Assembly (NCBI RefSeq): GCF_021028975.2
Contig: NC_059429.1
Location: 91,884,001-91,948,000 of the forward strand
DNA: 64,000 nt
Reading direction: 5' to 3'
Source: Sphaerodactylus townsendi
Lineage: Eukaryota
The notes beneath the pieces are model-generated. The model saw only the letters and a list, made by a program, of their open reading frames with translations, ran no database searches and had not been told where the DNA came from. Both the position numbers and the translations under genes were made by a program. This document shows positions 19,309-59,494 of the stretch, piece after piece (position 1 is the first letter of the stretch; each line of letters begins with the position of its first letter).

Positions 19309-19377
19309 ACTTCTGAAAAGTTGGAGTCAAGAACAACTACGGAGCAGTCTTCACTGATGGAAGCCAGAAGGGGTGAA
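19309..19377 (-). CDS. WDR77: WDR77 exon 9
   Basis: SPLLASISEDCSVVVLDSNFSEV; AG and GTAAGT boundaries; 69 bp. Confidence 0.95.
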
Positions 19378-20184: not shown

Positions 20185-20480
20185 CAGTGATCCCTAACAT
20201 GGTGTCTGTGGACACCTTTTCTGGAGTCAACCAAGGGTTTTAGGAAACAGGTAGGGTTCTGATTGGCTATGCAGATTTTTTAAAAATGTTGCTTTAGAAG
20301 CAGCTGCCACCACAGCACAAGGATCTCCGCCCTATTACTGAAGTTAAACTGGGGAAATCATTTGGTGACTGGCTCCATCTCCTGTAGCAGCCATTCTGTG
20401 GCACCACTTTGGTTGATGAGCTCACTATGCAGTGTCAGACTTGCAAGTATGCCCAGTCTTGAAACGGCTCGGAACCTCTG
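20185..20480. mobile_element. hAT MITE in WDR77 intron 8
   Basis: CAGTGATCCCTAAC...GGAACCTCTG; TSD ACCTAAAG/ACCTGAAG; body homologous to ~33540-33886. Confidence 0.65.
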
Positions 20481-36195: not shown

Positions 36196-37792
36196 GTAAT
36201 TACAAAATGTTTGTTATCATATATGTCTACTTGTGATTGATGCTTTATCCATATGAATGTTACTTTACCTCAAGAGTAGAAGCAGATTGCACTTGGCCTA
36301 GTCAAGAGAGGCGATGTTATTTATACTATTAAGGCTAATGTTTGGGGAGTTGCATACACATTCTTTAAAGTTTTGCTGTGAAGGAGATGACTAATATTGA
36401 CTCAGATACATCAGAAGCTGATGTTCACATTTCCGCATCTATTCATAGCCTCAGACAGGAAACTGGAGCTACAAAAGCTACAAAATTCTGAGCTGACCAG
36501 ATTACCACAAAATAGAAAAGGATTTTATAGTAGCTATAAATGACAGTTATCCCGTCCTCATTGCAACTTTACCCCTTGCTGTTTGGATATATTGTGGGTT
36601 GGCATAAGAAATTAAATGGAAATTTTGGGGAAATTTTGCGAAAGCCACAGACGACACACAAAGACTAGCAGCCGACACAGAAAAAGTTTAGAAACTCAGA
36701 AATACATAAAATGTATGTACAGTATTGTATCATATCAACATATTTTATCTTTTCGTGCTATAAATATGCACAATTTCTTTTCAAAAGCCAAGATAAATGA
36801 ATAAGAAAAATTGAGATTTATTCTCTGGTACAAAGGGAGGACAAAAAATGTTACATGAATTTCCGGATCACGAGGGCCACCACACCCCTAACCCCAGCAA
36901 TGTGGGAAGGATAGCTGTACAGAATTTGAGCACTAATTACACTATATGTGGACAAATGAAATTTAAGTATTACTGTAAAATACAGTGGTTTTTGGATAAC
37001 ATTGTTTAAAGCTTAACAAAAGAAGACCACGGTGAAACGCACCTTCAATCCTTAGTTCATTTCATTGGAATTAGGTGTGCCCAACAGATTTAGATTTTAG
37101 GCCAGTTGCATACAACTTTACAGAATATATCGATCTGGTTGCAGGCCAGTATTTTTATGTATTTTGGCTTTCTCAGATCACAACATATGGGAAAGCCACA
37201 AATCTTTTACAGAACAGAGGTGCCAAGTTGCTTTTTTCACTTACTGGGGAGATAGTAAATGAGTCCACAGAAGGACTTCAGCTGACTGGGTTTAAACCTG
37301 CCTCTGGTCATTCCTCTGCTACCTGCTCAGTATGGTTGAACAGCTTCAAGGTTTACCCCTTCTGAGCTGCGGGTATCACACTCCTTCTAGTTCCCTGATT
37401 CTAAAAGGGAAGATTTGGATGCACGGCCAGACCTTGCCCAGGGTTGCTTTTAGAGGACTGGGCTAATTAGTTTCCCTTTGTCTTCATGATACTTGAAAAT
37501 TGCTTTGTCATTTTAATATAATTGTTGGGTATCTTAAGTAGGTGCTCCTACCTTAAGTAGGTGCTCCTGGATTTGCCTTGCCAAATAAATTTTGATTCCT
37601 TGTTTGGCAATTTCATTCTTTTAGAATTGTTCATGTACAACTTCAAAACAGTGTAGCTTCAGACTAGTTTGCCTTGATTTTTTTACTAGTTTCCTGGTCT
37701 AATCTTATGCTATACATTTTTCTACTGAAAGCCTCATCTCTTCTCCTCCTTCCCCTTATGTCTCAAAGTGTTCATTTGCTTCTTTGTTGCAG

Positions 37793-37864
37793 GAGAAAGA
37801 GAGCATTGCCAAGTGCATCTCGGATCTGAAGGTGTTGTCAAAGTCTGCACAGGCAGCTGTCTAA
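37793..37864 (+). CDS. ATP5PB: ATP5PB exon 7 (terminal coding exon)
   Basis: EKESIAKCISDLKVLSKSAQAAV*; TAA at 37862-37864. Confidence 0.95.
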   Translation, partial: EKESIAKCISDLKVLSKSAQAAV

Positions 37865-41029: not shown

Positions 41030-41582
41030 GGCTGTTTCCGCACGGGCGGAAAACAGCTCCTTAGGGACGGTTAAAACACCGCTCTGGGGCGCTGTTCACA
41101 CAGCAACGCCATGCTGGACCCGCCCAAGCGGGTAGCGAAGAGCGCCCAGCTTTTAAAGCCTGCTCCGCCTCCTGGTGAGGGTTTTTTTAAAAGCAGGCGA
41201 TCTTCCCGCTCAGATGCGAATCGCGAACTGCACTGGCGTGAGGCCTCCGCCTTTGGCCCTTCCAGTATCTGCGAGGGACTTACCTTGCCTTCCTCTGCAG
41301 CTCCGGGCAGCTGGAAAGACATGCCCACGTTGCCCTGCTGAACAGAGCCTGAGAGATTATCGCAGGGCGAAGCGTGGGCGCTAACGGCTGACCAAAGCTG
41401 CAATGGAAGGCAAGGTAAGTCAAACAACAGGCTACCCTGGGCAGACTCCAGTGCAGAGCCGCCACTGTGGGCGGTGTTGGCATCGGAACTGCCCGCATGG
41501 GACCATGCAAATGGTCCTGATGCTCCACCGGTTTCATTTATGCCGGTGGGAAGCCACTGCCTCTGGCTGTGCGGAAACAGCC
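41030..41582. mobile_element. GC/CpG-rich Harbinger-like MITE nested in the Penelope-like element
   Basis: TIR GGCTGTTTCCGCAC...GTGCGGAAACAGCC, related to 10011-10530. Confidence 0.72.
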
Positions 41583-41705
41583 TTTCAGATTGGTTCCCCA
41601 CCCTGGGACATAGACAATATATACCCCATTCCCAATATATACCCCATATATAAACATTCCCTTTACACTAGACACAGTGCGTAACAGACTTCTCGCTGTG
41701 ATACA

Positions 41706-41746
41706 CCTCTGAAGATGCCAGCCACAAATGCAGGCGAAACGTTAGG
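41706..41746 (+). ncRNA. Minimal type I hammerhead ribozyme motif (Penelope-associated)
   Basis: CCT-CTGAAGA-T-GCC(13 nt)GGC-GAAA-C-GTT-AGG: core boxes CUGANGA and GAAA, helix I CCU/AGG, helix II GCC/GGC, palindromic ACGU helix III, NUH = GUU. Confidence 0.65.
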
Positions 41747-42946
41747 AACAAGATCTATCAGACCACGGCCACACAGCCCGGAAAACCCACAACCCCCACT
41801 AATTCAGCTGTTTGTCAGAAGTGCCTAATGTTCTTAAAGCATCTTCGAACGCAGGGAACGAATTCAACTCCTTGCTATGATGCTATTCTTTCAGGGGAAT
41901 AATTCACATTTCAGCACATTCTGTATTGACAAATTATGAGTGCGAACTCCTTCCCTGGACAGATAGTCAAGCTCTAGACAAACACCAAAATGGAATGATA
42001 TTTTCAGTTGACTGAGCAACAGATCATGTAAAAATGTTGAAGTGCATCAAGTCTTTATCAATTAAAAATAATTATGCCTTGGTTAAAACTATCAATAAAA
42101 TAACTATGAAAGCATCTCCATATCCTAGCAATTGCTGCATACTAAAACCCCTGATCTTTTCCCAATCTGCCAGAGTCTGTCAGCCAGAGCAACTGCCAAC
42201 AACTGACTACTGTCTTAACTGTTTCCAGCTTCCTCCTAATTGGTGAAGAGCTGACAGTAAAAGAATCTGGAGTTTCACCTTCCTCCTTTATCAGAGTGGT
42301 TGCTGTCCATACGGATTCATACCAGCAGTTGACCCATCAAAGTCAACAGAGAAAGAGAATTTGGGGTTTCGTAAAGCTATCGTACTCACATGAGATTAAT
42401 TGACTCTATAAAGGAAGTCATAGTTTGCCAAACTTAGTGGACATGATTAGGAATATTCATGGATGTGCAGGAGACACATTTTGAGCATCTGCAATTTCCC
42501 ACAGCTCCTTCTGCACTGTTCATTGTGTGGTGACTTCAGTTAATTGTATACATAACTGAATTTACTCTGACCTGACTTCAGCTGAATTATTAGTTCACAT
42601 TTGAGAGTTTCCTTTGGTCATCGTGCTGCTTACAATCTGGGGTATGTACATGGAAAACAGACCAGTTAAAAGGGGATAAAGGACATGAGTTAATACAGTG
42701 GCCAGGGCTTTAAACTGTAGCGCTCATTCCTACTCAGTTTTGTTTCTTGCTGTAACGTCCTGGGAAGAGACTAGCACACAGGTAGCATATTTTCACAGAT
42801 CAAGTCCCAAGGTCAGATTCGTGACATCCAGTTAAAAATAAGTTCCCGGTAGGGCTCTTGCCACTTCAGAGAGCCAAAATTGCTCGGGGTTGGCAGTACT
42901 CAGTTTACAGGATCAATGGTCTGAATTAAGATGGCAGCTTCTCATG

Positions 42947-43526
42947 TTATGATGTACTGTTAACTGCATAATCTTGATCTCTGCAGAAGATGTACGTTCT
43001 TAAAATCTGAGAGCATGTTTCCCTAAATTTCTTTATCTTGAAAGCATAGACAATTGGATTCATGACTGAATTTGAGTGGCTGAGAAGGATGCCGATGTAC
43101 CACATATACTGGGGGATCTTAATACGAGGGCAGAAATTTTGAATGCAGTTCATGATACACAGAGGAAGCCAACTCACAGCAAATAACAAAAGGACCAAAG
43201 TCAAATATTTGACTATCTTAAACTCCCTTCTGTAAAATGTTCTTGTTCCTCTGACATCTTTGGACCATTGTCTTAGCTTTGTTTGGATAATGCAGAAGAC
43301 ACTTCCGTAGAGAACAATCATGATGATCAATGGGATAAGGGTACCAACAAAAAAGCTGAAATAAACCATGTACTCCATTTTCATAATTCCGGTGAAAGTG
43401 CAATTCTTGTAGCTTGATTTTTTTTCTGTCCATCCAAAGATGGGTGCAAACCCCATCATCACAGACAACAGCCAGACTATTCCCAGAGCCACCAGAATTC
43501 TTTTTTGACTGGTTATTATCCTATAC
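42947..43526 (-). CDS. ADORA3: Adenosine A3 receptor-like paralog A, coding exon 2 (TM4-TM7)
   Basis: Acceptor ACAG|G; FGW...CTF...MEYMVYFSF, SWLPLCIMNC, ILLSHSNSVMNPIVYAFKIKKFRET; stop at 42947. Confidence 0.9.
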
Positions 43527-44022
43527 CTGTTTGCAAGGGATAAACATAGAATTCCATATAAAAAAAAGATTCGCTTTTTAAAAGCTATAAAGGTTCCAGA
43601 TCACATGCATTCATTTTTATGAGAAATTCTAAGCCATATTTTATTTTATTTTTACAAAATCCTGCCCTCCCACCCTCACAATTACCAAATTAAAACTGAC
43701 ACAATAAAATCACATTTAAGAATCAACTGAAAATCATTAACACAATTAAACCCTCATCTCCTTAGTTTGCAAATTATTTCCCTATGTAAAAAGAAAAAAG
43801 AAAAGCTGCTCAAACATGACAAGGGCCATCATTTAACATATGGTGATAACCTTTTGTCAGCATCTTGTTAAGATCTATTAAAAGTTGTGAGCTTTTTTCC
43901 TGGTTCTTGCCATGAGACTCTGGAGTGGCAACATGGGAGCCCTTGGCTTTTTTTCTTCTTTGGGCATGCAGTTACTTTCTCATCTTTGGCTTGGCCAGCA
44001 CCTGGCTTACCTCCAGCTAGAC

Positions 44023-44121
44023 CAGGGGTAGGGAACCTGCGGCTCTCCAGATGTTCAGGAACTACAATTCCCATCAGCCTCTGTCAGCATGGCCAATTGG
44101 CCATGCTGGTGAAGGCTGATA
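44023..44121 (+). mobile_element. Truncated copy of the 148-bp palindromic hAT MITE in the paralog A intron
   Basis: Matches the left arm and centre of 5092-5239; right arm lost. Confidence 0.85.
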
Positions 44122-45141
44122 AGTCCTGAACCATTGGAAAACACTCAACTAACTAGACTATAGGAACTCTGCACTGCTTGAGAATGCTTGTAGTGATTTC
44201 ACTCTGCTGAGATCTCAAGGGTGGGGATTGGAGGAATGTTTGGAAGAGAGAGATTAACCAAGAAATGCTGTAGTGGAACTCAGTTCCATTAAAGCTCGCT
44301 TTCATGCTGTGTTACCAAACCACCCTGGCATGGGTGGGTGGAATGCTTATTCACGAGTATCCTTGCCCTCCTGCCAGCCTAAAAGGGTGATGCTGGTCTT
44401 GCAGAGATGGGGAGCCCCAAACGTAAAAAGCTGGCAGGTGTAGATCCTACAAAGAGCTTTCAGGAATTGTGATTCCACTGTTTCTCATGCTCTCAGCTTG
44501 CTTGCCATATCAGCACATTTTCAGCTCCACAGCCAAAGAATGTGTCCTCAACATGATACAGTCGCCCTGCTGAATGGATTTCCAGCTACAAGAAGACTCT
44601 CCTGATGTCATTGCCTCCCACGGTTCATGCTTAAACCTTAGATACTACTCCCTTCTGTAACTAACTTCTTCTGACCACCTTACAATGCAATGTTGGGGTG
44701 AGAGATGGGACAGGAGGTGGACAGAGAAAGAGAGTGTGAGGGGTTGGGGATCAGAAAGAGAAAGAAAAAGTAATGGAGTTGAGAACAGAAAGTGAGAAAG
44801 AAAAAGTGATGGGTGGGAATTAAAAAAATAGAAGGAACAGCCGTAGTTTGACAGAAAGTAAGAGAGCAGTGCGGGAGTGAAAGAGAAACAGCGAGAAAAG
44901 TGGGGAGGGGGAGAGAGGAATCAAAGGTGGGAGAATGGCATGACTACTCCCCATACATATGCGGGCTCCTACTTGTATGCCATATTGGTTTCATAATAGG
45001 AAATGGAAGCCCATCAGTTCAAACGTTCAAATCAGCATTTGCCAGTAGTAAATACAGACAGTCTTATGCATATAAGCCAAATGTTTAAACCCAAGTTCCC
45101 AAACTGTCCTTGAACAATTGGTATCTTTAACAATGACTCAC

Positions 45142-45464
45142 CGGGTAAGGAACCTCACTCTCAGGTATCTGTCAACAGCAATAGCAAGGAGTGACATGAT
45201 CGAGGTTTGAGTGCAAGCCACCAGCAGGCAGCACATGAAGAGGCAGGCTTCGAAAGGGAGTTGGACTTTTAAATCCACCATGATGGCCACTGGCAACACG
45301 AGTCCAACTGCAATATCTGCCAGTGCTAGTGAGAGAATGAAGTAGCAAGTTGTTGTCAGACTAGCTGAGTTCTTCTTAACTACCCAGATGACTAGGATAT
45401 TACCCAAGGTAGCAAGCACTGCAATTACAGACTCCAGGAAAGCATAAACTTCCTTGAGTCCCAT
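45142..45464 (-). CDS. ADORA3: Adenosine A3 receptor-like paralog A, coding exon 1 (TM1-TM3); 300-aa protein
   Basis: CCAAGATGG start; [49 protein letters not shown]; donor CG|GTGAGT after DRY, the conserved adenosine-receptor intron position. An in-frame upstream ATG at 45521 is also possible. Confidence 0.9.
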
Positions 45465-45808
45465 CTTGGAAATGAAGAATATCTCCTCAAAATGCAGAAT
45501 TATGGAAATTTCTTTCAACATTGATGACCTGAAAAAAGCTTGGCATATCAGGGATCCTATAACCAAGCACCCAGTGATGCCCACATCCTCATAAATTCAC
45601 AAAAATTACATTTCCCTGCTAAGTGTACATTTCCCTGCTAAGTGTTTTTGTATGCTGAGCCAGAAGTGAGTAAGCTTCATAATGGGATTTCAGTAAAGAA
45701 AAAGCTAGATAAGATTTTAAAGGCTCTTTATATTTTAATTGCAGCAAAGCCCATTGAGGGAAAGATGCAGTGAGCCCTAGCAAAGGGTGACAACGTGTGG
45801 CTAGGCTG

Positions 45809-46182
45809 GGGGAGGGTTGGAAGGTGAGGCTTTGAGTGGGGGAGGGTTGGAAGGTGTGGCTAAGGGTGGGGGGAGGGTAGAATGTGAGGCTTGGAGTGAG
45901 AGGAGGGTTGGAAGGTGAGGCTTGGGGTGGGGGAGGGCTGGATGCAGTGGTGGGATTAAAATAATGTAACAACCGGTTCCAGTGGTGGGAATTCAAATAA
46001 TTTAACAGCGGGTTGCTTACAAGCACCATTTTAACAACCAGTTCTGCCAAAGTGATGCAAACCTGCTGAATCCCACCACAGGTGTGGCTCAGGGTGTGGC
46101 TAAGGTGTGGGGGGAGGGTAGAATGTGAGGCTTGGAGTGAGAGGAGGTGAGGCTTGGAGTGGGGGGAGGGTAGAATGTGAGA
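45809..46182. repeat. G-rich ~30-bp minisatellite interrupted by a small hAT-like MITE (~45945-46079)
   Basis: Units such as GGGGAGGGTTGGAAGGTGAGGCTTGGAGTG; insert CAGTGGTGGGATT...AATCCCACCAC. Confidence 0.8.
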
Positions 46183-46667
46183 TCTGGATGCCATTGGGAT
46201 ATGTTTTATTGACAGGACAGGTTGCTAAATCTGTCTATTGTTTTAGAGTATTAAATTGTATTTTTTAATGTTGAAATTGCCCTGAGCCTATAAAGAGTAG
46301 GGCAGCCTACAAATAAAATAAAATATCCTAAAAGTCTGTGGCGTGAGTACAGTCTGCCTCCAAACAAGGTAAATTTAGACTTAGAGATGGGAGAAAGTAT
46401 TCCTGCAAGGTAGGATTTACAACCAGTTATGGATACAGAAATCCCAACATGTTGGAGTTTATGATCAAGAGGCAGTTGAGAATGTAATATGCTTCCCTAT
46501 CAATAAGTATTCCAGAGAGGGAGAGAGAATTCTCCCTGGGATCCCCAGTGGAATCATGAAGTTCTGAAAGGATCTATTATTTACTGTAAGACTTCATTTC
46601 ATTTCATATGACATGATTGTTAAAAGTACTTTTTGTTGTTGCAGCTGTGAAAATAAGAACTGGACAT

Positions 46668-46668
<1 letters not shown>

Positions 46669-46730
<62 letters not shown>
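46669..46730. repeat. (TAT)n microsatellite, ~20 units, probably the 3' tail of the adjacent L2-like LINE
   Basis: Directly visible; abuts the 3' end of the minus-strand LINE. Confidence 0.9.
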
Positions 46731-48415
46731 GTAATTAGTGCAGGTTTATAGACCCGCCCTCCCCGGAGAACTCAAGAGGCCCGATGTGAACAACATGTAT
46801 AAGTAAGAAACACAATATCAAGTTAAAACCAGTAAGTAATGCATATAAATTAGAATGCAGCTCTAATAGAAAATACAGCCCTACCCCCCATTAAAATACT
46901 ACATTATTAAGAGTACATTAATATAAAGATGGCACCTGCTGCCAGCTCCCCAAAAGCCAACCCTAGGGGGGGAGGCGGTGGGATCAAGCTAGATGTTATA
47001 AAAAGAGAGAGAGGGAGGGGCCCCAATCAGCTGCCTAGGCCTCCCCCAAAGGCCCAGTGGAACAGCTCCGTCTTGCCCAGGCCCTGCGGAACTCAGCAAG
47101 AATCCATGGCAGGGCCCAGACAGCACAATTTTGGTGGGAGGCGAATTCCACCAGGAGCCCAGAAGGCCAGAGCTGTAAAAGGCTCTGTAGCCTGGGTGGG
47201 AAGACCAGCCTTACCGTATCCATTGAGGGCCAGGGATCACCAGTAAAGTTAGCCTCTGCCGGCCATGAAGACAAGATTTAGCAGGACATATAAGGGTAGG
47301 CATGATCCGGTAGATGCGAAGGAGATCCCGGGCTCGCCAAGGGCCTTAAAAGAGTTAATACCAGCACCTTTTATGAACATGATTCGGTATTCAGTTGAAG
47401 TAGCCAGTGCAGCGGCCGAAGCTTACAAGGTGTAATATGCTATGTTCTCTCATGGCACCCCTGTGAGCATCACGGGCCGCATGCATTCTGGACTTAACAT
47501 TTTTCAGATCTCGAATCGAGAGCGCCTTAAAGGCCTGCGTGAAGCCAGAGTTGCAATAATCTAGCCTGGAGGTGACGTTGCATGGACCACAGTAGCAGCC
47601 AGTCAATTGACGGGAGATGAAGGGGAGCCAGCTAGCCGGTTTGGCGTAAGATGGTAAAAAAGAATCAGGACCCGGGTTATATGGGCCACCTGGAGTCTCC
47701 ATTGAGAGAAGAGAATGAATCCAGAGTGGACCCCCCCGAATGCTAGAGACAGAGGGCTGGCGGGTGCCAATGCATAGCCCCCCCTCCCATCATCAGCGGC
47801 TGAAAATCCCACCCCCCCTCACACCCCAAGCCAAAGGATCTCCGTCTTGGGTGGATTCAGTTTCAACCTGCTCTGAGCACCAACCAACCCAGCCACGGCC
47901 TCCTAAAAGCAATGCTGGAGAGCTGCCGAAGCGTGACTGCTCCCACTCCATCAACAGAGATGAGCTGAGTGTCATCCCAGCATATTGGTGACCACGATCA
48001 GCCCGAAGCTCCGCACCAACTGAGCAAGGGAGTGCATATATAGATAATAATTGAGGCAGCAGAAGCCCTGGAGGCACACCACAATGAAGTGAGCACCTCC
48101 GGGATGCTTGGTCCCACACCACACTTGCTGTGTCCGGTCCCGGAGAAACGAGGCAATCCACTCAAGGACAGTGCCTGCTTTTGCACCCAGGCGGCCAGGC
48201 GGTGGGTCAAAGGGTAGGTGGTCGACCACATCAAGCGCTATGTTAGATCTAACAAAACCAGCAAGCGCCGATCCACTATGAAGTCTGGTTGCAAAGGGCA
48301 AATCCGTGTGGCCAGTGAGGCGGTCTCTGTCCCATGCCCAGCCGCCGGAACCCGGTTGAAAGGGATCAAAAGCGATGTCCTCCAGGAAACTGAAGCTGCT
48401 CCAACACCACTCTGT
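46731..48415 (-). mobile_element. L2/CR1-group LINE fragment (RT region, frameshifted)
   Basis: Pieces DPFQPG, LDVVDH, LEWIASFLRDRTQQV, HCGVPPG, HQYA, VTSRLDYCNS spread over several minus-strand frames. Confidence 0.85.
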
Positions 48416-48665
48416 CAATTACCTTCTGAGAAACCTTCCCAGAAGGATTTTGTATATCAGAGATTTATTTATCCTGTAAAGATGATCACAATTTAAGTTC
48501 TCCATGATACACTACACATGTAACTAGAGTTTCCCATGCTGGTAACTGATGTAATGTCTATGTATATATTTGTTTGTTTGTTTTTGTGAATACTGTTTTG
48601 CTACTAGTTAAGTTTTAAACAGATTTCATCACATATAGTGCTGGATGACAGGATGGGAAATCTAT

Positions 48666-50764
48666 GGCCCCTTCCGCACATGCAGACTAATGCACTTTCA
48701 ATCCACTTTCAATGCATTTTGCAGCTGGATTTTACTGCGCAAAATAGCAAAATCCACTTGCAACACTGGCGTTCCTGCCTAGGGACAGGGGTTACCCTAT
48801 GTCCCCTGAAGCCCCATTTAGTGGTCCGTGGAAGCCAACATTTCGAATTAAGTTTGTGCAATCTTTTAAAATTTTAAGTGTTTTTTTTCACGTTTCAAAG
48901 GTACTGCAGAGGCGTATTTTAAGGCCTTCATGGAACCAACATTTCAGGGTACCATCCAGAGACTGTCCTGATGATACCACCCAAATTTGGTGATGTTTGG
49001 TTCAGGGAAGCAAAAGTTATGGACCCCCCAAAGGGGTGCCCCATCCATTGTTTTTCAATAGGGAAGGGCTAACCTGAGATGGGAGCTACTCATTTGAGGG
49101 ACCATAACTTTGGCCCCCCTGAACATAACTTCACCAAACTTGGGTGGAATAATAAGAATAGTTAACAGATGATACCCTGAAAATTTGAGTGTCACTAGCT
49201 TTACAAAATACCCTTCCAGAGCACCCAAAGAAAATTTGCCCAGGATTCTTTGTTTTGCAGTGACTTTGCTCCATTGTAGCCAATGGGAATTTCTGAAGTG
49301 TGTAGGCAGGCTGCATTTTTTTTTGAAGATAGAGGCACCAGACTTTCAGGGTGGCTCCAGGAGAACCTCCCTGGTAATAGCATCCAGGTTTGGGGCAACT
49401 TTGCTTCCTGGAGGGTTCAATTTTATGGGCCCCAAAGGCTTATTTTGTTTCCCAGCTCCTGCACATGAGAAGCCTGTGGGCTGAGTTCTCTCAGAACTCT
49501 CTCAACTCCCCCCGCTCCAGAAGCAAAGCTCACCAAGCTTGGGTGCTGTTACTCAAAACCTCTTGGAGCCACCTTGAAAGTCTGGCACCTCTATCTTCAA
49601 AAATGTGCAGCCTGCCCCAGAAATTCCTCATTAGCTACAATGAATTAGCTACAAAATCACTGCAAAACAAAGAATCTTGGGCAAATTTCTTGGGGCGCCT
49701 GGAAGGGATGTATTTTTAAGCTAGTGATACCAAAATTTCGGGGTATCATCTGTTAACTATTCTTATGATGCCACCCAAGTTTGGTGAAGTTATGTTCAGG
49801 GGACCAACGTTATGGTCCCTCAAATGGGTAGCCCCATCTCAGGTTAGCTCCGTTGAAAACAATGTGGATAAGGGCATTTCCATTTTGGGCGATCCATAAC
49901 TTTGCTTCCCTGAACCAAACATGATGCCAAACTCGGTGAATTATCATCAGGGCAGTCTCTGGATGATGCCCTGAAATCATGGTGCCGCTAGCTTTAAATA
50001 AACTGGCTCCTGCGAATGAAAAAACTATAAAATACCCCAAACCAAATGATACCTTGCATTAGCATTTTGTTCATATTAGGGCAGGGACATAATCGGACAA
50101 TTTTTTGTCCGAATATTGCTAAATTTGCCAGTTTCCAGCCGAATCTTCTATTTGTTTCATCTGAATCTCCAACCCTCCAAAAGTGATGCTGTTTCCAGGG
50201 AATTTGGGGAGAATCCCACCCAAACAGCATCACTTTCCCAATTGTTTTAACCGAAGGGACTCCAGATTCTCCTTTAAGGTGAATTTAAAGAAGAATCCTG
50301 AGCTCCCTAGTTTAGAAAGCACCATTGAAAGTGATGCTGTTTGGGGAGTGGATCCTGGAGAGTGTTTTGTGAGAGAGATGATGCTGACATTTGTTTTGGT
50401 AAATGTTTTGCTGGGGGTGATTTAATGAGAGATTTACATGCTTAATACCCACTTGCACTGGCAGGTTGTTGTTTCTCAGGCTAACAACCTACCTCATAGG
50501 GTTGTTGTGATTAGGAAAATTAGGAGGAGAAGAGTTGGTGGGGAGAGGCATGTATGTTTTCTGGGAGTGGGAGGTGTTTTGTGAGCTGGTACAAAAAAAT
50601 CATTGTTTGGTCATGGTGGGGGAGGGTGGCGACGCCCTATGCCTTGCAGAGGCATGAAACTCAGGTTTTGTCCCCGGGTGCCAGTTTGCCTAGGTATGCC
50701 CCTGCTTGCAAACAATTGTGAAACTGGATTGAAAGTGTATTAGTCAGCATGTGTGGAAGGAGCC
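48666..50764. mobile_element. Harbinger-type MITE split by a ~1.94-kb hAT-like insertion (48764-50704)
   Basis: MITE halves 48666-48763 and 50705-50764 with TSD TAT on both sides. The insert runs CACTGGCGTTCC...GGTATGCCCCTG and is flanked by duplicated CTTGCAA. Confidence 0.85.
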
Positions 50765-51562
50765 TATGGCTTATGAACTGGGGGGTCATATCTTTTTAAA
50801 GACTCTTATCACAGACCATTTTCCTGAGCCCTCACCCTTAGGAAAGTTTCATTATCGAACTTGAAGATAGTGCAAATTGATAAAGCAGATGTGGTATTAA
50901 CATCTTCCTTGTGGTATGTGATGTAGCTAAGGCAGCATGTTAAAAATGATTTGATCTTCACTTGCAGATTTGGCCTATGGAAAGTTACTCAACTGAATTC
51001 TCAGAACTCCACAAACAGTAAAATGTTCAACAAATGTCTCTGAATAACATTACCCCAATTAGCTACTTCTCTGCTTTAGATTCTGTACCCCAAAATAAGT
51101 TATGAATCACTCCAAATCATGGACCTCTGGACTCTGTAGCGCATACAATGCAAGCCACCATACAGGGGAATCTATTCCAAATACCTTTTTTTGTGTGTGT
51201 GCGAAGTGAATAGCGGAAATTTTTGCAAAACACTCACACATACTAGGTTTTGGACAAGGGAATAGGTTATGTTAATTTTAGGGAAATCATCAGAATTTTA
51301 TTAAAAAAAGACTTTTCAGTCATTCAGTAAACAAATTACTGATTGACTGATGTCATCATATTCAGTCAACAGATTACAAGACATGAAAACCACATTTGAG
51401 TCTAACAGCCAAGGTTGCTAGCACGAGAGGAAAAAGCAAGAACAATGCAAGCAAATGTATCTCTTTAAGGCAAGAAGACAACCATTTCAGAAAAGACTAT
51501 CCCGAAGAAAAATCCTCTCTTGGGCTGAACCATTACACCACAGCTTTGCTCCTTCTGCAACA

Positions 51563-51702
51563 ATGCCCAATCTTGTCAGATCTCAGAAGTTAAACCAGGT
51601 TGGCCCTGTTTCATGTCTTGCAAACCACCACTGAACATTTCTTGTCTTGAAAAGCCTGTGGGATTGCCATAAATCAGCTGTGAACTGATGGCAAAAAAAA
51701 AA
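51563..51702 (+). mobile_element. 5S rRNA-derived SINE, decayed
   Basis: GCCCAATCTTGTCAGATCTCAGAAGTTAAACCAGGTTGGCCCTG is 5S-like; tail shared with 1402-1580; ends in an A-run. Confidence 0.6.
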
Positions 51703-53357
51703 AAGGACAGAACAGCAGCACTTTGGGTGTCCTTCACCACTGATTGTAACTGAGGATGAGGCCACGAGATGGTAAACATACTTGCTCTGGTGCAAATCCA
51801 TATCTGACCGTGTGAATTAGTTATCTGTTAGCTGAAACCATGAAGAGGGATCGGGTAGAATAGATTATAGAATTCACTGCTACTAAATCCAAACAAAAGT
51901 GACCTCCACTGGGACCCATCACAGATATACATTTAGTAACGATAGATAATAGGAAACCTTAAAATTACATTTTTAGCACTTGCATTATTGTGGCTGCTGG
52001 CGAAACTAAACAGCTGATCAGTGGTGAGATCAAAATTTTTTAGTAACAGGTTCCCTCGCCAGCTCCCCCTCAGCAAAGGGGGCAGAGGCATACCTAGGCA
52101 AACCTGAGCCGTGGGCAAAACCTGAGTTGGATGCCCCCCTCATGGGCAGCCACCCCACCACGACTCCCCCCAATTCTTTTGCACCAGGTCATTTCTAAAT
52201 CATCATCACATTATAGAAAATGCCCCAACGCACAAATCTGAACACAGCAATGGTGAAACACACAGGTTCTTTGATAGAGACTGGTGAGATAAAAGGTATG
52301 AAAGGCTGAGAATCAATGAATTGTAGTACCTGAAAGGGATTAACCCAGTTCAGGGAGTTACATTATTAGTCACAAGTGCTATATGGAACCTTCACATTCA
52401 AAGGCAGTATGCCTCTCGGGGAGGCGAGGGCATGGAGATGGAAAAGCGGACCCAATTAGTAACCCCCTCTCGGCACACACAAATAATTAGTAACCCACTC
52501 TCTGGAACTGGTGAGAACCTGCTGGATCCCACATCTGCAGCTGATGTTTCCTCAGTGGGATATAATTGCTAGGAGAGTCTCCCTCCCTCCTGGTTCTATT
52601 GAAGTACGCATTTCAAGTACCCAAGGGGACTTGAAAAAGGTGTTCCCCTCCAGCTGAAGTGAAAGTGGGTCCACGTGTATGAAGAAACAGAAGTAAGTCC
52701 TCTCTCCCTCCCTCTGTTGCTCTCTGGATGGGGTGTATGGTAATGTGTCTGCTGCCCTGCAGAAATGCTTCTTTGCCTCCACCTGTGTTCTGCATGTATA
52801 TTTGTAAATGAAGCAAATGTCACAAAGATTCTGTCAAAATGCCCTGTGGTAAATCCGGGAGTGTACTTGCCACAGAACTTTTTGCCCTGCTTCTCTCTTC
52901 ATTGCTCCCCAGTTCTTCCTGGGATTTGAGGCAGGGCCAGTGCATTATGCCCCAACTGTTTCTTCATGAGCCTGGTGCTTCTCTATTTGCACCGTGAGCT
53001 CTTCTGCAATGTCTTCCATGCATGCGCAGACAACCTCCATTTCCCATGTTCTGATTGGCTGAATCCCTCCATATTTTTCCACTGAAAGGGCGGGCACCGA
53101 TTCTCAGTGCCTGTTCATTTGTGAGGTGGGCCAGAGCAGCAAGGAGGGGAAAATGCCCCCGGTTCTGCTGCTGTGGAGATTTTCATGGCAGCAGAAGCCA
53201 CCGGAGCAACAAAGGGGCATTTAAAAAGAACCTCAAATTTGATGGTTTTGGAAATTTGCAGAGCAAAGCCAATGCTGCGGGGCAGCACCAGGGCAACAAC
53301 GTGGCAGACATGCTGCAGCATCTGGGAGCCGTAAATAACTTCCAGCTGCACCAGAGT

Positions 53358-55545
53358 GAATAGAATAGAATAGAATAGAATCTTTATTGGCCAAGTGTGA
53401 TTGGACACACAAGGAATTTGTCTCCGGTGCATATGCTCTCAGTGTACATAAAAGAAAAATACATTTGTCAAGAATCATAAGGTACAGCACTTAATGATTG
53501 TCATACAGGTCTAGTAAGCAATCAGGAAACAATCAATAGTAATGAAAACATAAAATGTAAAATCATAAAATAAAATAAAATAAAATGTCAGCTGGGCTAT
53601 AGTCATACAGTCCGCCGAGGTGGGGAGGAGATGGGTAATAGGAATGATGAAAAAAAGTAGTGCAGTAATTATATAATAAGTATATAATAAATAGTTTAAC
53701 ATTATCCCGAGGAATTATTTCTTTTAACAGAGTGATGGCGATTGAGGAAAAAAACTTTGATGTATGTCTAGTTGTCTTGGTGTGCAGGTGCTCGTGTGGC
53801 GGCGTTTAGAGGTAAGAGTTGAAACAGTTTATGTCCAAGATCTGCGGGGTCGGTAAATGTACCACTGCCCTTTTTTTTTGACTTCAAGTGCAGTATACAG
53901 GTCCTCTCCAATGGAAGGCAGGTTAGCAGCAATTGTTTTTCTGCAGTTCTGATTATTCTCTGAAGTCTGTGTCGATCTTGTTGGGTTTGCGGGGCCAAAC
54001 CACACAGTTATAGAGTGCAGATGACAGACTCAATAATTCCTCTGTAGAACTGTATCAGCAGCTCCTTGGGCAGTTTGAGCTTCCTGAGGTTGAGCAGAAG
54101 AACATTCTTTGTTGTGCTTTTTTTTGATGACATTTTGATATTAGGTGACCATTTTAGGTCATGAGATATGATGGAGCCCTAGAATTTAAAGGTCTCTACT
54201 GTTGATACTGTGTTGTCTAATTATTGTGTGAGAGAGGAGGTAGGATGGGAGGTTTCTCCTGAAATCTACCACCACCATTTCTACGGTTTTAAGTATTGTT
54301 CAGTTCTAGATTGTTCAGTGGCACCACGAGGGCTGGATTGTTCAACCTCCCGTCTGTATGCGGTTTCATCGTTGTCTCGAATGAGACCAATCACTGTTAA
54401 TATCATCTGCAAATTTCAGTATTTTAACAGATGGATGCGTTTGAGATGCAGTCATTGGTATACAGAGAAGAGAGAAGTGGTGAGAAATTACACAGCCTTG
54501 GGGCCCACCAATGCTCATTTACAGGTGTCTGATGTAATTTTCCTAGCTTCACCTGCTGTTTCCTATCTGTTAAGGAAGCTTGTGATCCACTTACAAATAT
54601 GCTCGGGTACTGCTAGCTGATTTAGTTTGGTTAGAAGAGGATGTCGGTCTGATAGTATTGAATGCTGTTAAAAGTCAACAAAGAGGACCCTTGCATAGGT
54701 CTTTGGCAATTCAAGATGCTGGGATATAGTGCAAAGCCATATTAACAGCATCGTCTGTCGATATCTATTTGCTTTCGGTATGCACAGAATTGCAAGGGTC
54801 CAACAAAGGATCATTGATGGTTTCAAATGGTACATCACTAGCCTTTCAAAGTTTTCATAACTACAGATGTTAGAGCAACTGGTCTGTAGTCGTTCAGTTC
54901 CTTGATGGAAGGCTTCTTGACTGGGGCGATAATTGGAGTGTTTGAAGCAGGAAGGAACATATAGCACCTCTCTAGTGATTTGTTGAAGATTTGGGTGAAA
55001 ATGGGGGGAAAATTGGACAGCACAGACTTTTAAGCAAGAAGGTGTTATCTTGTCTGGGCCTGAATTGCTTTTCAGGCTTCTGTCTGTGAAATAGATCTTG
55101 CACTTCCTTTTCACAGAGATCACCAGGGTTGTAAAGCCCAATGGGAAATGGAGTTCAGTTGTGGGAAGGTTGGCGATTGTTGGTGCGTCTGGGATAGAGG
55201 GTGTGGAGCACGGTGACTGTAGATTGTTTTCAAACCTACAGTAGAACACATTCAGGTCATCTGCCAATTGCTGATTTCCTTCAGCTTGGGAAGGTGGTTT
55301 GCTGTAACCGGTGATATTTTTGAGAGTTTTCCACATGTTTGCTGTTTCGTTTGGTGAAAACTGATTTTTTAGCTTTTCAGAGTCGTTTCTTTTTGCTGCT
55401 CTGATCTCCTTTGTTAATACATTTCTGGCCTGATTATACAGCATTCTATCACCCTTTCTGTAAGCCTCTTCTTTGGAACGGCGTAACTGCTTAAGTTTAG
55501 CTGTGAACCAAGGTTTGTTGTTACTATATATACGCAAGTTCCTGG
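53358..55545 (-). mobile_element. Rex1/Babar-like non-LTR retrotransposon, 5'-truncated and frameshifted
   Basis: NNKPWFT..., LADDLNVFYCRFE, GPDKI, LNDYRPVALTSVVMK, YARVLFVDF; (CTATT)n 3' tail seen as GAATAGAATAG at 53358-53381. Confidence 0.85.
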
Positions 55546-56464
55546 AGTGTTCTCCATGATAACAACGGGGCATTTTTACTGTGAAAAATCAGCCTATGTT
55601 TCTAGTGTGCTCTCATCCAAAGGGAGTCAACCCAGGTAAATATCACCCTCAGAACTTCTCATGGCTCAGAAAAGGGAACAGGTAACAATTTCTTACTTTT
55701 AACTTTTCTCCTTGAGCTAATATTATTTCTCAATAAACTAAAATATTTTTACATGATTTTGGCTCTGAGTGCGTGTGTTAACCAAATCCAGAACCCATGT
55801 AAGGGGTAATGATTCCGACTCTTACACCACAGCTTCGTTTTTAAAAGAAGCTTGTAACTTCCTATGAGGTTAGATTACAAGATTGAGTTTTTGCAAGACA
55901 CCTGGGTGTATCTCAGAACAAGTAGGATAAGATTTTTATTTTCGGCACTTCCTGCATAGAATGGTGCTTGTCTGTGTGCATAAATATGCCTAAGAACCTA
56001 TCAAGAGAAACATCTAGAAAACCTTTCCTCATCCAGATTGTAATAACTGTTACCAGAAGTAGTGTATTTTACAAGAAGGAAATCTATTGACCACGCTTAG
56101 GTAATTGCTTCCTCTTAAGGATTTTCAGTCTATGTTTTACTTTTGCTAGTTTAATATTTTCTTGAAGAGGCTTGACTGATATGCTTTACTCATATATGTT
56201 GTTTGTTTCAGGGTAATATACCAATATACCTGGAATTAGGAGTACTTGGACAAATATAAGCCTCTAAGAGCAATTTGATTCTGCAGATTCCCCCACAAAA
56301 ACTGCTTTTTGAGAGACAAAAGGCAGAAGGGGACAGCTCATCTAATTCTGTGTGAAGTAAAACTCTGAGGCTGGCAAGATTTCTTAAAGTGGATTATCAT
56401 CACTACGTCACGCTTCTTTGCTGGGCTCTTCTGCCTGAGGACTGTGCTTGAATTTCAGTGGAAG

Positions 56465-56814
56465 ATGACCAATAGCAACCTGTCCAACGACCCTCTGCTT
56501 ATTGTCTACATAACTATTGAAGCCCTGATAGGATTGATGGCCACCCTGGGAAATGTTCTGGTAATCTGGGTAGTGAGACTGATCCCAGCCAACCAGAATA
56601 CTACTTTTTACTTCATTGTGTCTCTGGCCCTGGCTGATATCGCTGTTGGGATTCTTGTTGTTCCACTGGCCATTGTAGTGAGCTTGGGACTTAAAATGCA
56701 CTTCTATGCTTGCCTCCTCATCTGCACCCTGTTGATGGTTTTTTCTCATGCATCCATCATGTCCTTGATGGCCATAGCAGTCGATCGGTACTTGAGAGTA
56801 AAGGTTCCCACACA
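56465..56814 (+). CDS. ADORA3: Adenosine A3 receptor-like paralog B, coding exon 1 (TM1-TM3); 321-aa protein
   Basis: GGAAGATGA start; MTNSNLS (N-glycan sequon), [60 protein letters not shown]; donor CA|GTGAGT; 350 bp. Confidence 0.92.
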
Positions 56815-58878
56815 GTGAGTATCATTAATGTAGTGCCAATGAATTTCATTCCAGTATGATCTGGCATCAATCGTGTCATGGCTCCTGTGGCTATCTCTCC
56901 TTTCTTTCAGTCCATACTTACTCAGAAAATAAGCTGTCTACTATCTCAGTAACTCGGGCACCAGGTTTAGGGTTTGTGTCAGAAATTTACTAAACGGAAC
57001 CTGTCCCCTTAATATCCCTTCAAAATATTTTCAAATTGAACAGAATTATTTCTGACGCTTGGTAGCAGTTGGAAATCTGACAACTATTCTAAACTCAGTT
57101 TAACTCAGACAGCAAGGGGGGAAAGTCATTTAGCAGATGTATGTTGACAGTGATGACACATAATCAGCAAGATTAGCCAGATGAACAACATGGCCACAAT
57201 TGGTGGGTTGTGTACAGCATTTGGACTTTCTGTTGGTTACTATATGTTCTCAATGCCTTTGGGACAGGTTTGTGATACCATATAAACCTAGGTCCTGTGT
57301 TTATTTGAGATGTTTTGTTCTCTGAGGCTGCATGCACCAAGCAGCTTTAAAGGTTTTCCTTGCTACTCCCTCCCCTACATGATAAGCAATCTCCTGGGGC
57401 TTTCTCCCCCCTCAGTAAGAGAACACACACAAGAGAGATTGGTGATGACACAGGATCAGATAATCTCTCTGTACAAGAAGGAACTGCTGATTCCTGATGT
57501 TGATTTCATTTTACAGCTTTATGGTGATCATATTAACAAGTTTGTTTGTATGTGGGTGATAAGCCAAGAAGATTGTTTTCAAGTTTAAAAAAAACAGAGC
57601 ACATGTGCAAGGGAAGCTAACCCTCCCCATTTTTCCTTGCTCTATGTCACAAAGCATAGGTTTCCCTAGGCAGACTCCAATAACTAAGCTGAAAAATGAA
57701 ACAGAGTGAGGCAGAACACAGCAGAGGATAGGACTGAGCTTGGGCCTGAAATGGGGAAGGAAAGATCCCTTGGGTGAAGAGCGAAGAAGACCTGTGGTAT
57801 TTCTTCCAAATGCTGGTTGTGGCGGTAGAGTTATACATGGAAATGTTTCCTTTGAAACTAGGAAATGTTGAATAGATTAATTTCACTATTCAACTAGACT
57901 TACTTGCAATTTTGAAGTAAAGTGAAATAATATCATAAGAGTTAAATTCAAAGCAAGGTGTTTTTGGACAGCCCTAGTCAGTGCTGTCTGACCCATTTGT
58001 TTCACCTTGCTAGCAATCAGAAACCTTTCAAAAGCAATCAAGCGACACGATGCCTTTCCGTCTACAAATGTCCCAACAATCAGCTAAATAGTTATTGCTT
58101 TAGATCAAAGCAGTCTATAATCTAAAATATGTATATCCCATCCTGCCATTAAAATGCATTGGGTGACCTTGGGATGGTTATTCTCAGTCAAACCTACCCC
58201 ACATGTTAATGCAAGGATAAAATGGAGGAAGGAAAGGATGTTGTAATTGTTGTGGGTCCCTAGTTGGGGGAAAACTTGGTATAAATATCTAAATTAATTA
58301 ACAACAGCCATTTAAATCATTTTTTCTGGTTTTGATAATAAATTGGCAAAAGAACTATTATTCTATGTATGTTTAATCCATCTATGCCTAGAAGGAGTGA
58401 CCTAAATTCCAAACTGCCTTTGGCTTTCCCACTAAAAACTAAGACTAGGCAAGGCAATCCTTGCTATTTCCTTATCCTTCCTTCCCCATCCACTGCTATC
58501 AATAGTCTACTTATGCCAAATTGCTATATTTTCTCATTCCCATCCTGCTATTTCCTCCCCCCATGTTATTTGCCCTTAGCTCCTTTTCTACACATGAGTT
58601 TCTGCTTAAATCTCACTGGCTAGGGATCAGCAAAGAAGAATAGGCAACCTCGAGCCCTTCGGGGAGGAGGTGGCCTATAAATTTAATTAATAAATTAAAA
58701 AAAATAAACCTGCCATTTGATTACACTGGGGGCAGGAAACACAGGGGTTTAGTTGAAGCTTAGGAACATCAAGTCAGCATTTTAGTATAATCAATACAAT
58801 AATTGTGCATGAAGGTGTTGCAAAGAAAGACCTGACTATACAAGAACTGCAGCTAACATGTTTTTTTTTTCAAAATAG

Positions 58879-59494
58879 GTACAGAATAATTGTTACCCGG
58901 AGGAGAATCTGGGTGGCTCTGGGAACTTGCTGGTTCATGTCTTTCTTGGTGGGTCTTGTGCCCTTGTTTGGATGGAACCGAAGGAACCCCCAAAACCCCA
59001 GCTTCTTGGAATGTCATTTTCAGAATGTGATGAACCTAGATTATGTCGTGTTCTTCAGCTTCTTTTCCTTGATCCTTGTTCCACTGCTGATCATGTGCAT
59101 CCTTTACGTAGAGGTCTTCCGTGTCATCCAAAGACAGCTAAAGCAAACTGCAACATCCGTCCAGGGAACAGGAATATTTTATAGAAGGGAATTTAGAACA
59201 GCCAAGTCTTTGGCCCTGGTCCTTTTTCTGTTCATTGTGTGCTGGTTGCCTTTGTGCATTCTGAACTCAATCTCACGTTTCTGCCAAACTTGTAGAATAC
59301 CTCCGTTACTGTTCTATCTAGCCATTCTGCTCTCTCATGCCAATTCAGCTATGAATCCCATTGTTTATGCCCTCAGGATCAACAAGTTCAGAAAAACCTA
59401 TATTCTCATTTTCAAAACGTTCATTTTGCACATGAAACGAGAACCTGATGCTGAGAATTCATCAATAGATCAGTTGTCAGAAGATACTCTCTGA
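58879..59494 (+). CDS. ADORA3: Adenosine A3 receptor-like paralog B, coding exon 2 (TM4-TM7)
   Basis: Acceptor T10-CAAAATAG|G; FGWN...FLECHF, REFRTAKSL, CWLPLCILNS, ILLSHANSAMNPIVYA; TGA at 59492-59494. Confidence 0.92.

What the first reader, a model, noticed from the sequence alone, without database searches (positions are those of the whole stretch)
42947..59494. Head-to-head pair of intact, highly diverged adenosine A3 receptor paralogs
Seen: two complete two-exon GPCR genes on opposite strands with ATGs 11 kb apart, both in frame, with the intron after DRY and the nucleoside-binding residues E1.39, ECL2 Phe, N6.55 and S7.42/H7.43. Known: human has a single ADORA3 next to ATP5PB and antisense to it; Ser at 5.42 and a non-His at 6.52 (Cys in both here) distinguish A3 from A1/A2. 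Inference: an old inverted duplication with both copies retained, possibly a lineage-specific two-receptor purinergic system. Copy A has the human-like orientation. Copy B looks more human-like in TM1-3, while A looks more human-like in parts of TM5-7.
Basis: partly seen in the sequence, partly recalled or inferred. Interest (0 to 1): 0.85.

Follow-up and report, generated by a model that had tools for sequence, protein, structure and literature searches.

The report
Two adenosine A3 receptor genes, head-to-head
This gecko carries two intact, very different copies of the adenosine A3 receptor gene lying head-to-head, but both are already in public annotation and lizards, birds and alligators have the same pair, so it is an old reptile-and-bird feature, not a gecko novelty.

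Summary
The window is from the gecko Sphaerodactylus townsendi. It carries two intact two-exon class-A GPCR genes on opposite strands, with ATGs 11,001 bp apart. Each has a GT-AG phase-2 intron just after DRY.

All four exons match human A3 best, ahead of A1. Both genes sit inside the amniote A3 clade. Both are already RefSeq models: 'adenosine receptor A3-like' (300 aa) and 'adenosine receptor A3' (321 aa).

Both are under purifying selection. dN/dS against Gekko is 0.39 for A and 0.33 for B, and no bootstrap reached 1.

The 'lineage-specific' reading fails. The same layout, with ATP5PB tail-to-tail with a proximal A3 that is head-to-head with a distal A3, occurs in Gekko, Podarcis, a duck and an alligator.

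A single inverted duplication near the base of reptiles plus birds is the most economical reading. Protein trees cannot separate it from parallel duplications (AU p 0.38 against 0.22).

Expression of copy A is barely documented: 2-3 reads, in a related species.

I found no paper describing the pair.

The scan's other notes on this same stretch concern its TM2 deletion and its ligand-pocket differences.

Interest is modest.

The parts
45142..45464 (-). Copy A (proximal A3 paralog, public protein P0001) exon 1: ATG to the donor site, covering TM1-TM3 and DRY
   Evidence: Pfam 7tm_1 E 1.4e-17. Best PDB hit is human A3 (99.9 bits, against A1 at 84). Exact prefix of P0001.
43527..45141 (-). Copy A intron (GT...AG, phase 2). 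It holds a high-copy SINE-like repeat at about 43954-44137.
   Evidence: for the splice sites. One search shows repeat depth thousands of times the flanks in both DNA and RNA runs.
42947..43526 (-). Copy A exon 2: ICL2 to the C-terminus (TM4-TM7, helix 8), with stop TAA at 42949-42947
   Evidence: Pfam 7tm_1 E 2e-24. Best PDB hit is human A3 (183 bits, against A1 at 143). Exact suffix of P0001.
56465..56814 (+). Copy B (distal A3 paralog, public protein P0121) exon 1
   Evidence: Best PDB hit is human A3 (139 bits, against A1 at 101). Exact prefix of P0121.
56815..58878 (+). Copy B intron (GT...AG, phase 2)
58879..59494 (+). Copy B exon 2, with stop TGA at 59492-59494
   Evidence: Best PDB hit is human A3 (219 bits, against A1 at 178). 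Exact suffix of P0121.
45465..56464 (.). 11-kb spacer between the two start codons. No gene is called here. It holds a foldback inverted-repeat element (48666-50764) and a 301-aa ORF with no family match (54668-55573, minus strand).
37784..37864 (+). Last coding exon of ATP5PB (ends ...KCISDLKVLSKSAQAAV*). It is the conserved neighbour, tail-to-tail with copy A about 5.1 kb away.
   Evidence: public gene call, Pfam Mt_ATP-synt_B, 253 aa; ORF ending at 37864

Best explanation
The region holds two working genes for A3-type adenosine receptors. These are class-A GPCRs, presumably Gi/o-coupled and activated by adenosine. The genes lie head-to-head next to ATP5PB.

They descend from an old inverted duplication of the ancestral ADORA3 gene. 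The duplication predates the radiation of living squamates. Most likely it happened once near the base of reptiles plus birds, possibly with early gene conversion between the copies.

The proximal copy (A here) kept the ancestral position and orientation, tail-to-tail with ATP5PB as in human. In squamates it evolved fast. It lost one residue in TM2, it has a short N-terminus with no N-glycosylation sequon, and it carries Q instead of H or N at 3.37.

The distal copy (B here) stayed closer to the mammalian sequence.

Both keep the residues that hold adenosine. They differ at the pocket-rim positions (169, 6.58, 7.35) that tune agonist selectivity in human A3.

Shown here: gene structure, A3 membership, purifying selection and shared architecture. 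Inferred, not shown: ligand, G-protein coupling, expression, and any division of labour between the copies.
For: Gene models: both have canonical splice sites and match the public proteins exactly.

A3 membership:
- All four exons match human A3 best, with A1 second.
- In the ML tree (72 proteins, A1 as outgroup) both copies fall inside the amniote A3 clade (100/96), with frog A3 outside it.
- The AlphaFold model of copy A has pLDDT 81.8 and pTM 0.77. Its top Foldseek hit is human A3 8x17 (TM 0.82/0.87).

Age of the split:
- A-type orthologs occur in 9 squamates (5 geckos, cordylid, lacertid, iguanian, skink) and form a 100/100 clade.
- B-type orthologs occur in 7 squamates; the six in the tree (the window's own among them) form a 100/100 clade.

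Shared architecture: ATP5PB is tail-to-tail with the proximal A3, which is head-to-head with the distal A3, in this gecko, Podarcis, the duck Mergus and Alligator sinensis. Gekko has the same head-to-head pair. Many other birds have two A3 genes on one contig.

Selection:
- A: dN/dS 0.39 (bootstrap 0.27-0.58).
- B: dN/dS 0.33 (bootstrap 0.22-0.48).
- 0 of 1000 bootstraps reached 1.
- Against a close relative, 5 of the 7 listed coding differences in A are synonymous.

Conserved residues: binding and activation residues are kept in both copies.

Partial orthology signal: crocodilian distal + squamate B group at 92/95. Alligator paralogs have dS 0.46, which is large for that slow lineage.
Against: The timing of the duplication is not resolved by sequence.
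- The amniote A3 backbone is a polytomy.
- A clade of squamate A+B is not rejected (AU p 0.37).
- Three independent duplications are not rejected either (p-AU 0.22, against 0.38 for a single old event).
- Group-consensus sites split evenly: 3-6 for the ancient reading, 3-6 for the independent reading, 2 for the control.
- Alligator-duck dS shows no positional orthology signal.

A turtle has only one A3 gene within 10 kb on either side.

Expression of copy A rests on 2-3 reads in one of three RNA runs, from a related species, with no splice-junction read. Copy B expression was not examined.

No ligand or coupling data exist for either paralog.
Confidence: 0.75

Rival explanations
1. Parallel origin. 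The head-to-head pair arose independently by inverted duplication in squamates, in birds and in crocodilians, so the gecko pair is a squamate-specific invention (still older than about 200 million years).
For: The constrained tree with three lineage-specific duplications is not rejected (delta lnL 11.9, p-AU 0.22). Squamate A+B as one clade is not rejected (p 0.37). As many consensus sites unite A with B as unite A with the bird proximal copy. Alligator paralogs are closer to each other than to either duck gene.
Against: It needs the same inverted arrangement, at the same place relative to ATP5PB, to arise three times. The single-event tree is slightly better (delta lnL 7.9, p-AU 0.38). Crocodilian distal + squamate B group at 92/95. 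The slow crocodilian rate and gene conversion explain the closeness of the alligator pair equally well.
Confidence: 0.2
2. Copy A is a silent or decaying duplicate that merely still has an open frame.
For: There are almost no RNA reads on its exons in three RNA runs of a related species. It evolves faster, has a short N-terminus and carries a TM2 deletion.
Against: The frame is intact and splice sites canonical in 9 squamates spanning about 200 million years. The TM2 deletion is shared by all nine, so it is ancient and tolerated. dN/dS is 0.39, with no bootstrap at or above 1. Against a close relative, 5 coding differences are synonymous and 2 are not. All activation motifs are kept and the 7TM model is confident. 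A3 receptors are expressed at low levels and in few cell types in mammals (my own knowledge), so few reads in unknown tissues say little.
Confidence: 0.04
3. Copy A is not an A3 receptor but a member of another adenosine-receptor clade: A1, or the adora4/adora5 clades of Kowatschew and Korsching (PMC8462279).
For: Copy A is only about 50% identical to mammalian A3. adora5 is reported in reptiles.
Against: Copy A falls inside the amniote A3 clade (100/96), with frog A3 and then A1 outside. Both of its exons score higher against human A3 than against A1, A2A or A2B. It sits at the ADORA3 position beside ATP5PB. adora4 and adora5 are defined as lying outside adora3 as a whole.
Confidence: 0.01

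Closest known systems
Human adenosine A3 receptor (ADORA3; structures 8X16/8X17, 8YH0, 9EBH)
   Same: 7TM class-A fold. One phase-2 intron after DRY. Location beside ATP5PB in tail-to-tail orientation (copy A). Shared residues E1.39, ECL2 Phe, S5.42, W6.48, L6.51, N6.55, I7.39, S7.42, H7.43, DRY and NPxxY.
   Different: Mammals have one gene, while this gecko has two. Both copies have Cys at 6.52 where human has Ser. Copy A has Q3.37, a one-residue TM2 deletion and a short N-terminus with no N-glycosylation sequon. Copy B has S3.36 and V5.38. The rim residues 169 / 6.58 / 7.35 are T/Q/W in A and Q/S/F in B. Identity to mammalian A3 is 51% for A and 56% for B.
Bird and crocodilian A3 / 'A3-like' gene pairs (for example Mergus octosetaceus P0048 + P0076; Alligator P0041 + P0072)
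   Same: Identical architecture: ATP5PB tail-to-tail with a proximal A3 that is head-to-head with a distal A3. Same exon structure. Distal copies share [S/C/P]3.36-H3.37 with gecko B.
   Different: The spacer between start codons is 2.5 kb in the duck and 5 kb in the alligator, against 11 kb here. Archosaur proximal copies have N3.37 and G5.42, no TM2 deletion and a normal N-terminus. One-to-one orthology with gecko A and B is not proven by sequence.
Adenosine A1 receptor (ADORA1)
   Same: It is the sister subtype, with the same intron position, the same core binding residues and the same fold.
   Different: A1 has N5.42, H6.52, T7.42 and E3.37. It lies at another locus and scores 16-41 bits lower than A3 on every exon.

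Membership tests
Adenosine A3 receptor (ADORA3) subfamily of class-A GPCRs | Rhodopsin-type seven-helix fold | tested here: met
   Pfam 7tm_1 on all four exons. The AlphaFold model of copy A has pLDDT 81.8 and its top structural hit is human A3. Copy B was not modelled, but it is closer to human A3 in sequence.
Adenosine A3 receptor (ADORA3) subfamily of class-A GPCRs | Phylogenetic placement inside the A3 clade, apart from A1/A2 | tested here: met
   ML tree with A1 as outgroup: tetrapod A3 100/95 and amniote A3 100/96, containing both copies. Human A3 is the best PDB hit for every exon. A2A, A2B, adora4 and adora5 sequences were not in the tree.
Adenosine A3 receptor (ADORA3) subfamily of class-A GPCRs | Two coding exons split by one phase-2 intron in ICL2 shortly after DRY | tested here: met
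   The same split codon occurs in the Gekko, Podarcis, duck and alligator genes. It is shared with other adenosine receptor genes, so it is not specific to A3.
Adenosine A3 receptor (ADORA3) subfamily of class-A GPCRs | Conserved genomic position next to ATP5PB | tested here: met
   ATP5PB ends at 37864 (+), 5.1 kb from the stop of copy A. Copy B is the next gene beyond A. The human arrangement is from my own knowledge.
Adenosine A3 receptor (ADORA3) subfamily of class-A GPCRs | Adenosine-contact residues (ECL2 Phe, N6.55, T/S3.36, W6.48, L6.51, S7.42, H7.43) and activation motifs (DRY, NPxxY) | tested here: met
   All are present in both copies, with S in place of T at 3.36 in B. The roles of these residues are from published A3/A2A structures, recalled from memory.
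Adenosine A3 receptor (ADORA3) subfamily of class-A GPCRs | Residues that separate A3 from A1/A2: S5.42 (not N), non-His 6.52, H3.37 | tested here: inconclusive
   S5.42 and C6.52 are in both copies. H3.37 is only in B, and A has Q. H3.37 is not general even among non-mammalian A3 receptors: frogs, turtles and the bird/crocodilian proximal copies have N.
Adenosine A3 receptor (ADORA3) subfamily of class-A GPCRs | Activation by adenosine and coupling to Gi/o | not testable with these tools
   It needs expression in cells and a signalling assay.
Adenosine A3 receptor (ADORA3) subfamily of class-A GPCRs | The gene is transcribed and spliced | tested here: inconclusive
   Copy A: 2-3 reads on exon 2 in one of three RNA runs of a related species, and no junction read. 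Copy B: not examined, because the reads tool allowed one call.
adora4 / adora5 clades (PMC8462279) | Placement outside the adora3 clade as a whole: adora4 is sister to adora3, and adora5 is basal to adora1/3/4 | tested here: not met
   Both copies are nested above frog A3 inside amniote A3.

The most novel reading that the evidence does not exclude
The inverted A3 duplication happened once in the stem of reptiles plus birds, or even of amniotes with mammals later losing one copy. The squamate proximal copy then changed its pocket: the TM2 one-residue deletion shifts the helix-2 proline, and it carries Q3.37 and W7.35. On this reading it is a receptor with a different preferred nucleoside, such as inosine or a modified adenosine, and not a second plain adenosine receptor. 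The 'A3R' of chicken or lizard used in comparative pharmacology would then be only one of two distinct receptors.
Probability: 0.15. Interest if true: 0.55.

Novelty: new member of a known kind. Interest (0 to 1): 0.3.

Why it matters
Textbooks count four adenosine receptors. These data show that lizards, birds and crocodilians routinely carry two A3-type genes side by side. I found no paper that says so.

Comparative work has treated 'the' chicken or lizard A3 receptor as one gene. The m6A study (bioRxiv 2020.11.21.391136) is an example. The two copies differ exactly at the rim residues that study found to set agonist selectivity. Anyone using sauropsid A3 receptors for pharmacology, or ADORA3 as a single-copy marker, should therefore know which paralog they hold.

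Beyond that it is an ordinary old GPCR duplication. Both gene models are already public.

Tried and rejected
- A1, A2 or adora4/5 identity for copy A: rejected by exon-wise PDB searches and by the tree.
- Assembly artefact or false duplication: rejected. The copies are 52% identical, and DNA similarity survives only in two coding stretches. The pair recurs in other species.
- A third copy or pseudogene in the window: none.
- Resolving the date of the duplication with protein trees: a careful ML tree, a one-clade AU test, three constrained trees with an AU test, group-consensus quartet sites and alligator/duck dS four-point sums all came out star-like.
- Expression from public RNA: the only RNA runs were from a related species and gave 2-3 reads on copy A.
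- A second turtle copy: none within 10 kb on either side in Mauremys, so this is unresolved.
- Literature on a sauropsid A3 duplication: four searches found nothing.
- Rfam on the whole window at gathering scores found nothing. A permissive scan of 41400-42000 gave no hammerhead.
- Pfam on the 301-aa ORF in the spacer: no significant family.
Full report
**What is there**

Reading the sequence gives two gene models.

Copy A is on the minus strand:
- ATG at 45464.
- Exon 1 is 45142-45464.
- Donor GT at 45141-45140, acceptor AG at 43528-43527.
- Exon 2 is 42947-43526, ending in TAA.

Copy B is on the plus strand:
- ATG at 56465.
- Exon 1 is 56465-56814.
- Donor GT at 56815-56816, acceptor AG at 58877-58878.
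- Exon 2 is 58879-59494, ending in TGA.

Both introns split the same codon in phase 2, eight residues after DRY. The start codons are 11,001 bp apart and the genes point away from each other.

All four exons match Pfam 7tm_1. There are no N runs in the window, and tblastn finds no third copy.

**How the spliced models were handled**

The database search returned two public full-length proteins, P0001 (300 aa) and P0121 (321 aa). My exon translations are their exact prefix and suffix. One split-codon residue lies between them, R in P0001 and Q in P0121.

Those public proteins were used for the alignments, the trees and the structure model. dN/dS was computed per exon and only the counts were pooled.

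**Identity**

The window is from the gecko Sphaerodactylus townsendi. P0001 is named 'adenosine receptor A3-like' and P0121 'adenosine receptor A3' in NCBI's annotation. Both lie on a 139-Mb chromosome record.

Against all PDB chains, every exon matches human A3 best and A1 second:

| Exon | Human A3 (bits) | A1 (bits) |
|---|---|---|
| A exon 1 | 100 | 84 |
| A exon 2 | 183 | 143 |
| B exon 1 | 139 | 101 |
| B exon 2 | 219 | 178 |

The careful ML tree used 72 proteins, with A1 as outgroup. It puts both copies inside an amniote A3 clade (100/96), with frog A3 outside.

This excludes A1. It also excludes the adora4 and adora5 clades, which a 2021 paper defines as lying outside adora3 as a whole (PMC8462279).

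An AlphaFold model of copy A, built from a 45-sequence alignment, is a confident seven-helix bundle (pLDDT 81.8, pTM 0.77). Its best structural match is human A3 8x17.

**Residues**

Both copies have E1.39, the ECL2 Phe, S5.42, W6.48, L6.51, C6.52, N6.55, I7.39, S7.42, H7.43, DRY and NPxxY.

The differences between the copies are these:

| Position | Copy A | Copy B |
|---|---|---|
| 3.36 | T | S |
| 3.37 | Q | H |
| 5.38 | M | V |
| 169 | T | Q |
| 6.58 | Q | S |
| 7.35 | W | F |

A preprint on N6-methyladenosine found that positions 169, 6.58 and 7.35 set agonist selectivity in human A3 (10.1101/2020.11.21.391136). Different agonist preferences are therefore conceivable but untested.

Copy A also lacks one residue in TM2 (ADIAVG-LV) and has a short N-terminus with no N-glycosylation sequon. 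Both features are shared by all nine squamate A-type proteins, so they are old and tolerated.

B is closer to mammalian A3 overall (56.3% against 50.6%). A is slightly closer only in TM3, TM6 and helix 8.

**Selection**

These are Nei-Gojobori estimates against Gekko japonicus:

| Copy | dS | dN | dN/dS | Bootstrap range |
|---|---|---|---|---|
| A | 0.35 | 0.135 | 0.39 | 0.27-0.58 |
| B | 0.29 | 0.095 | 0.33 | 0.22-0.48 |

None of 1000 codon bootstraps reached 1.

DNA contigs of a closely related species keep copy A's exons free of indels. Of the seven listed coding differences, five are synonymous. The introns differ by about 3-5%. Some differences were not listed by the tool, so this count is a minimum.

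The two paralogs are 52% identical in protein and dS is saturated at about 1.6. At the DNA level only two coding stretches still pair as inverted repeats.

**Expression**

No RNA run of this species was offered. Three RNA runs of a related species put 2-3 reads on copy A's exon 2 in one run, and no splice-junction read.

This neither shows nor excludes expression.

**Is it lineage-specific? No**

A-type proteins occur in five geckos, a cordylid, a lacertid, an iguanian and a skink. B-type proteins occur in five geckos, the lacertid and the cordylid. Each type forms a 100/100 clade in the tree, which holds all nine A-type and six of the seven B-type proteins.

The layout is the same in four species:
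- this gecko (ATP5PB's last exon ends at 37864);
- Podarcis muralis;
- the duck Mergus octosetaceus;
- Alligator sinensis.

In each, ATP5PB lies tail-to-tail with a proximal A3 gene, and that gene lies head-to-head with a distal A3 gene.

Gekko has the same head-to-head pair, 20 kb apart. Many further birds, palaeognaths included, have two A3 genes on one contig.

A turtle shows one gene within 10 kb on either side. Mammals show one.

**When did it happen?**

The shared architecture argues for one inverted duplication before squamates and archosaurs split. A rough dN clock points the same way. It uses gecko-Podarcis ortholog dN of 0.20-0.26, paralog dN of 0.36, and a split of about 200 million years taken from my own knowledge. 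It gives roughly 300 million years.

Two pieces of sequence evidence fit this:
- Crocodilian distal + squamate B group at 92/95.
- Distal copies share [S/C/P]3.36-H3.37, while proximal archosaur, turtle and frog genes share T-N.

Sequence alone does not settle it, however:
- The backbone of the tree is a polytomy.
- A squamate A+B clade is not rejected (AU p 0.37).
- A single-event tree (p-AU 0.38) and a three-independent-events tree (p-AU 0.22) both survive.
- Consensus-site quartets are even.
- Alligator/duck distances are star-like.

Early gene conversion between the inverted copies would produce exactly this pattern.

I put about 0.6 on a single old event. I put about 0.95 on the duplication predating living squamates.

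**Mechanism**

The most likely working model is two Gi/o-coupled adenosine receptors with the same core binding site. They would be kept for hundreds of millions of years because they differ in where they are expressed, in agonist preference at the pocket rim, or in both.

The gene structures, A3 membership, constraint and conserved layout are shown here. Ligand, coupling, expression and any division of labour are inferred.

**Novelty and verdict**

Both gene models are public. The pair is a general sauropsid feature, not a gecko invention.

The squamate A clade is an uncharacterised, fast-evolving A3 paralog with an unusual TM2 deletion, which makes it a new member of a known kind. Interest is modest.

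Noticed in passing
window 43954-44137 (intron of copy A): High-copy repeat, probably a SINE. Depth in DNA contigs and RNA reads of a related species is thousands of times that of the flanks. Many reads turn back or switch strand at 44057-44100, as if the element has a palindromic core.
   Followed up: no
window 48666-50764: Nested inverted repeats (arms 72 nt at 94%, 46 nt at 89%, 44 nt at 91%, and others) form a roughly 2.1-kb foldback element in the spacer between the two receptor genes.
   Followed up: no
window 54668-55573 (-): A 301-aa ORF in the spacer with no significant Pfam family. From memory it resembles the part of a LINE ORF2 upstream of the reverse transcriptase. This was not tested.
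   Followed up: partly
window 41706-41746: The scan's note of a hammerhead ribozyme motif here is not backed by Rfam. There was no hit at gathering score in the whole window, and no hammerhead at E up to 1 in 41400-42000.
   Followed up: partly
window 45280-45321; alignment: The one-residue TM2 deletion of copy A is shared by all nine squamate A-type proteins and by no other A3 or A1 sequence in the alignment. It is a clade marker about 200 million years old or more.
   Followed up: yes
L004 10001-27359 (Alligator sinensis): The public model of the distal alligator A3 gene starts about 15 kb upstream of its coding exon 1 (25424) and spans the whole proximal gene (18833-20379, opposite strand) inside its first intron. 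This is either a long 5' UTR exon or a model artefact.
   Followed up: partly
proteins: No snake, anole, agamid or monitor A3-type protein appeared in any top-120 list, although their A1 proteins did. Sceloporus showed only the A type. Possible losses in Toxicofera, or simply hits below the list cut-off.
   Followed up: no
alignment, position 3.37 and 5.42: H3.37 is shared by mammals and the distal sauropsid copies, while frogs, turtles and the bird/crocodilian proximal copies have N. Bird and crocodilian proximal copies have G at 5.42 instead of S. This is a weak hint that mammalian ADORA3 may not be a simple ortholog of the proximal copy despite its position.
   Followed up: no
P0207 (Eublepharis macularius): The B-type model of the leopard gecko is 474 aa, about 150 aa longer than its relatives. 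It is probably an over-extended gene model.
   Followed up: no
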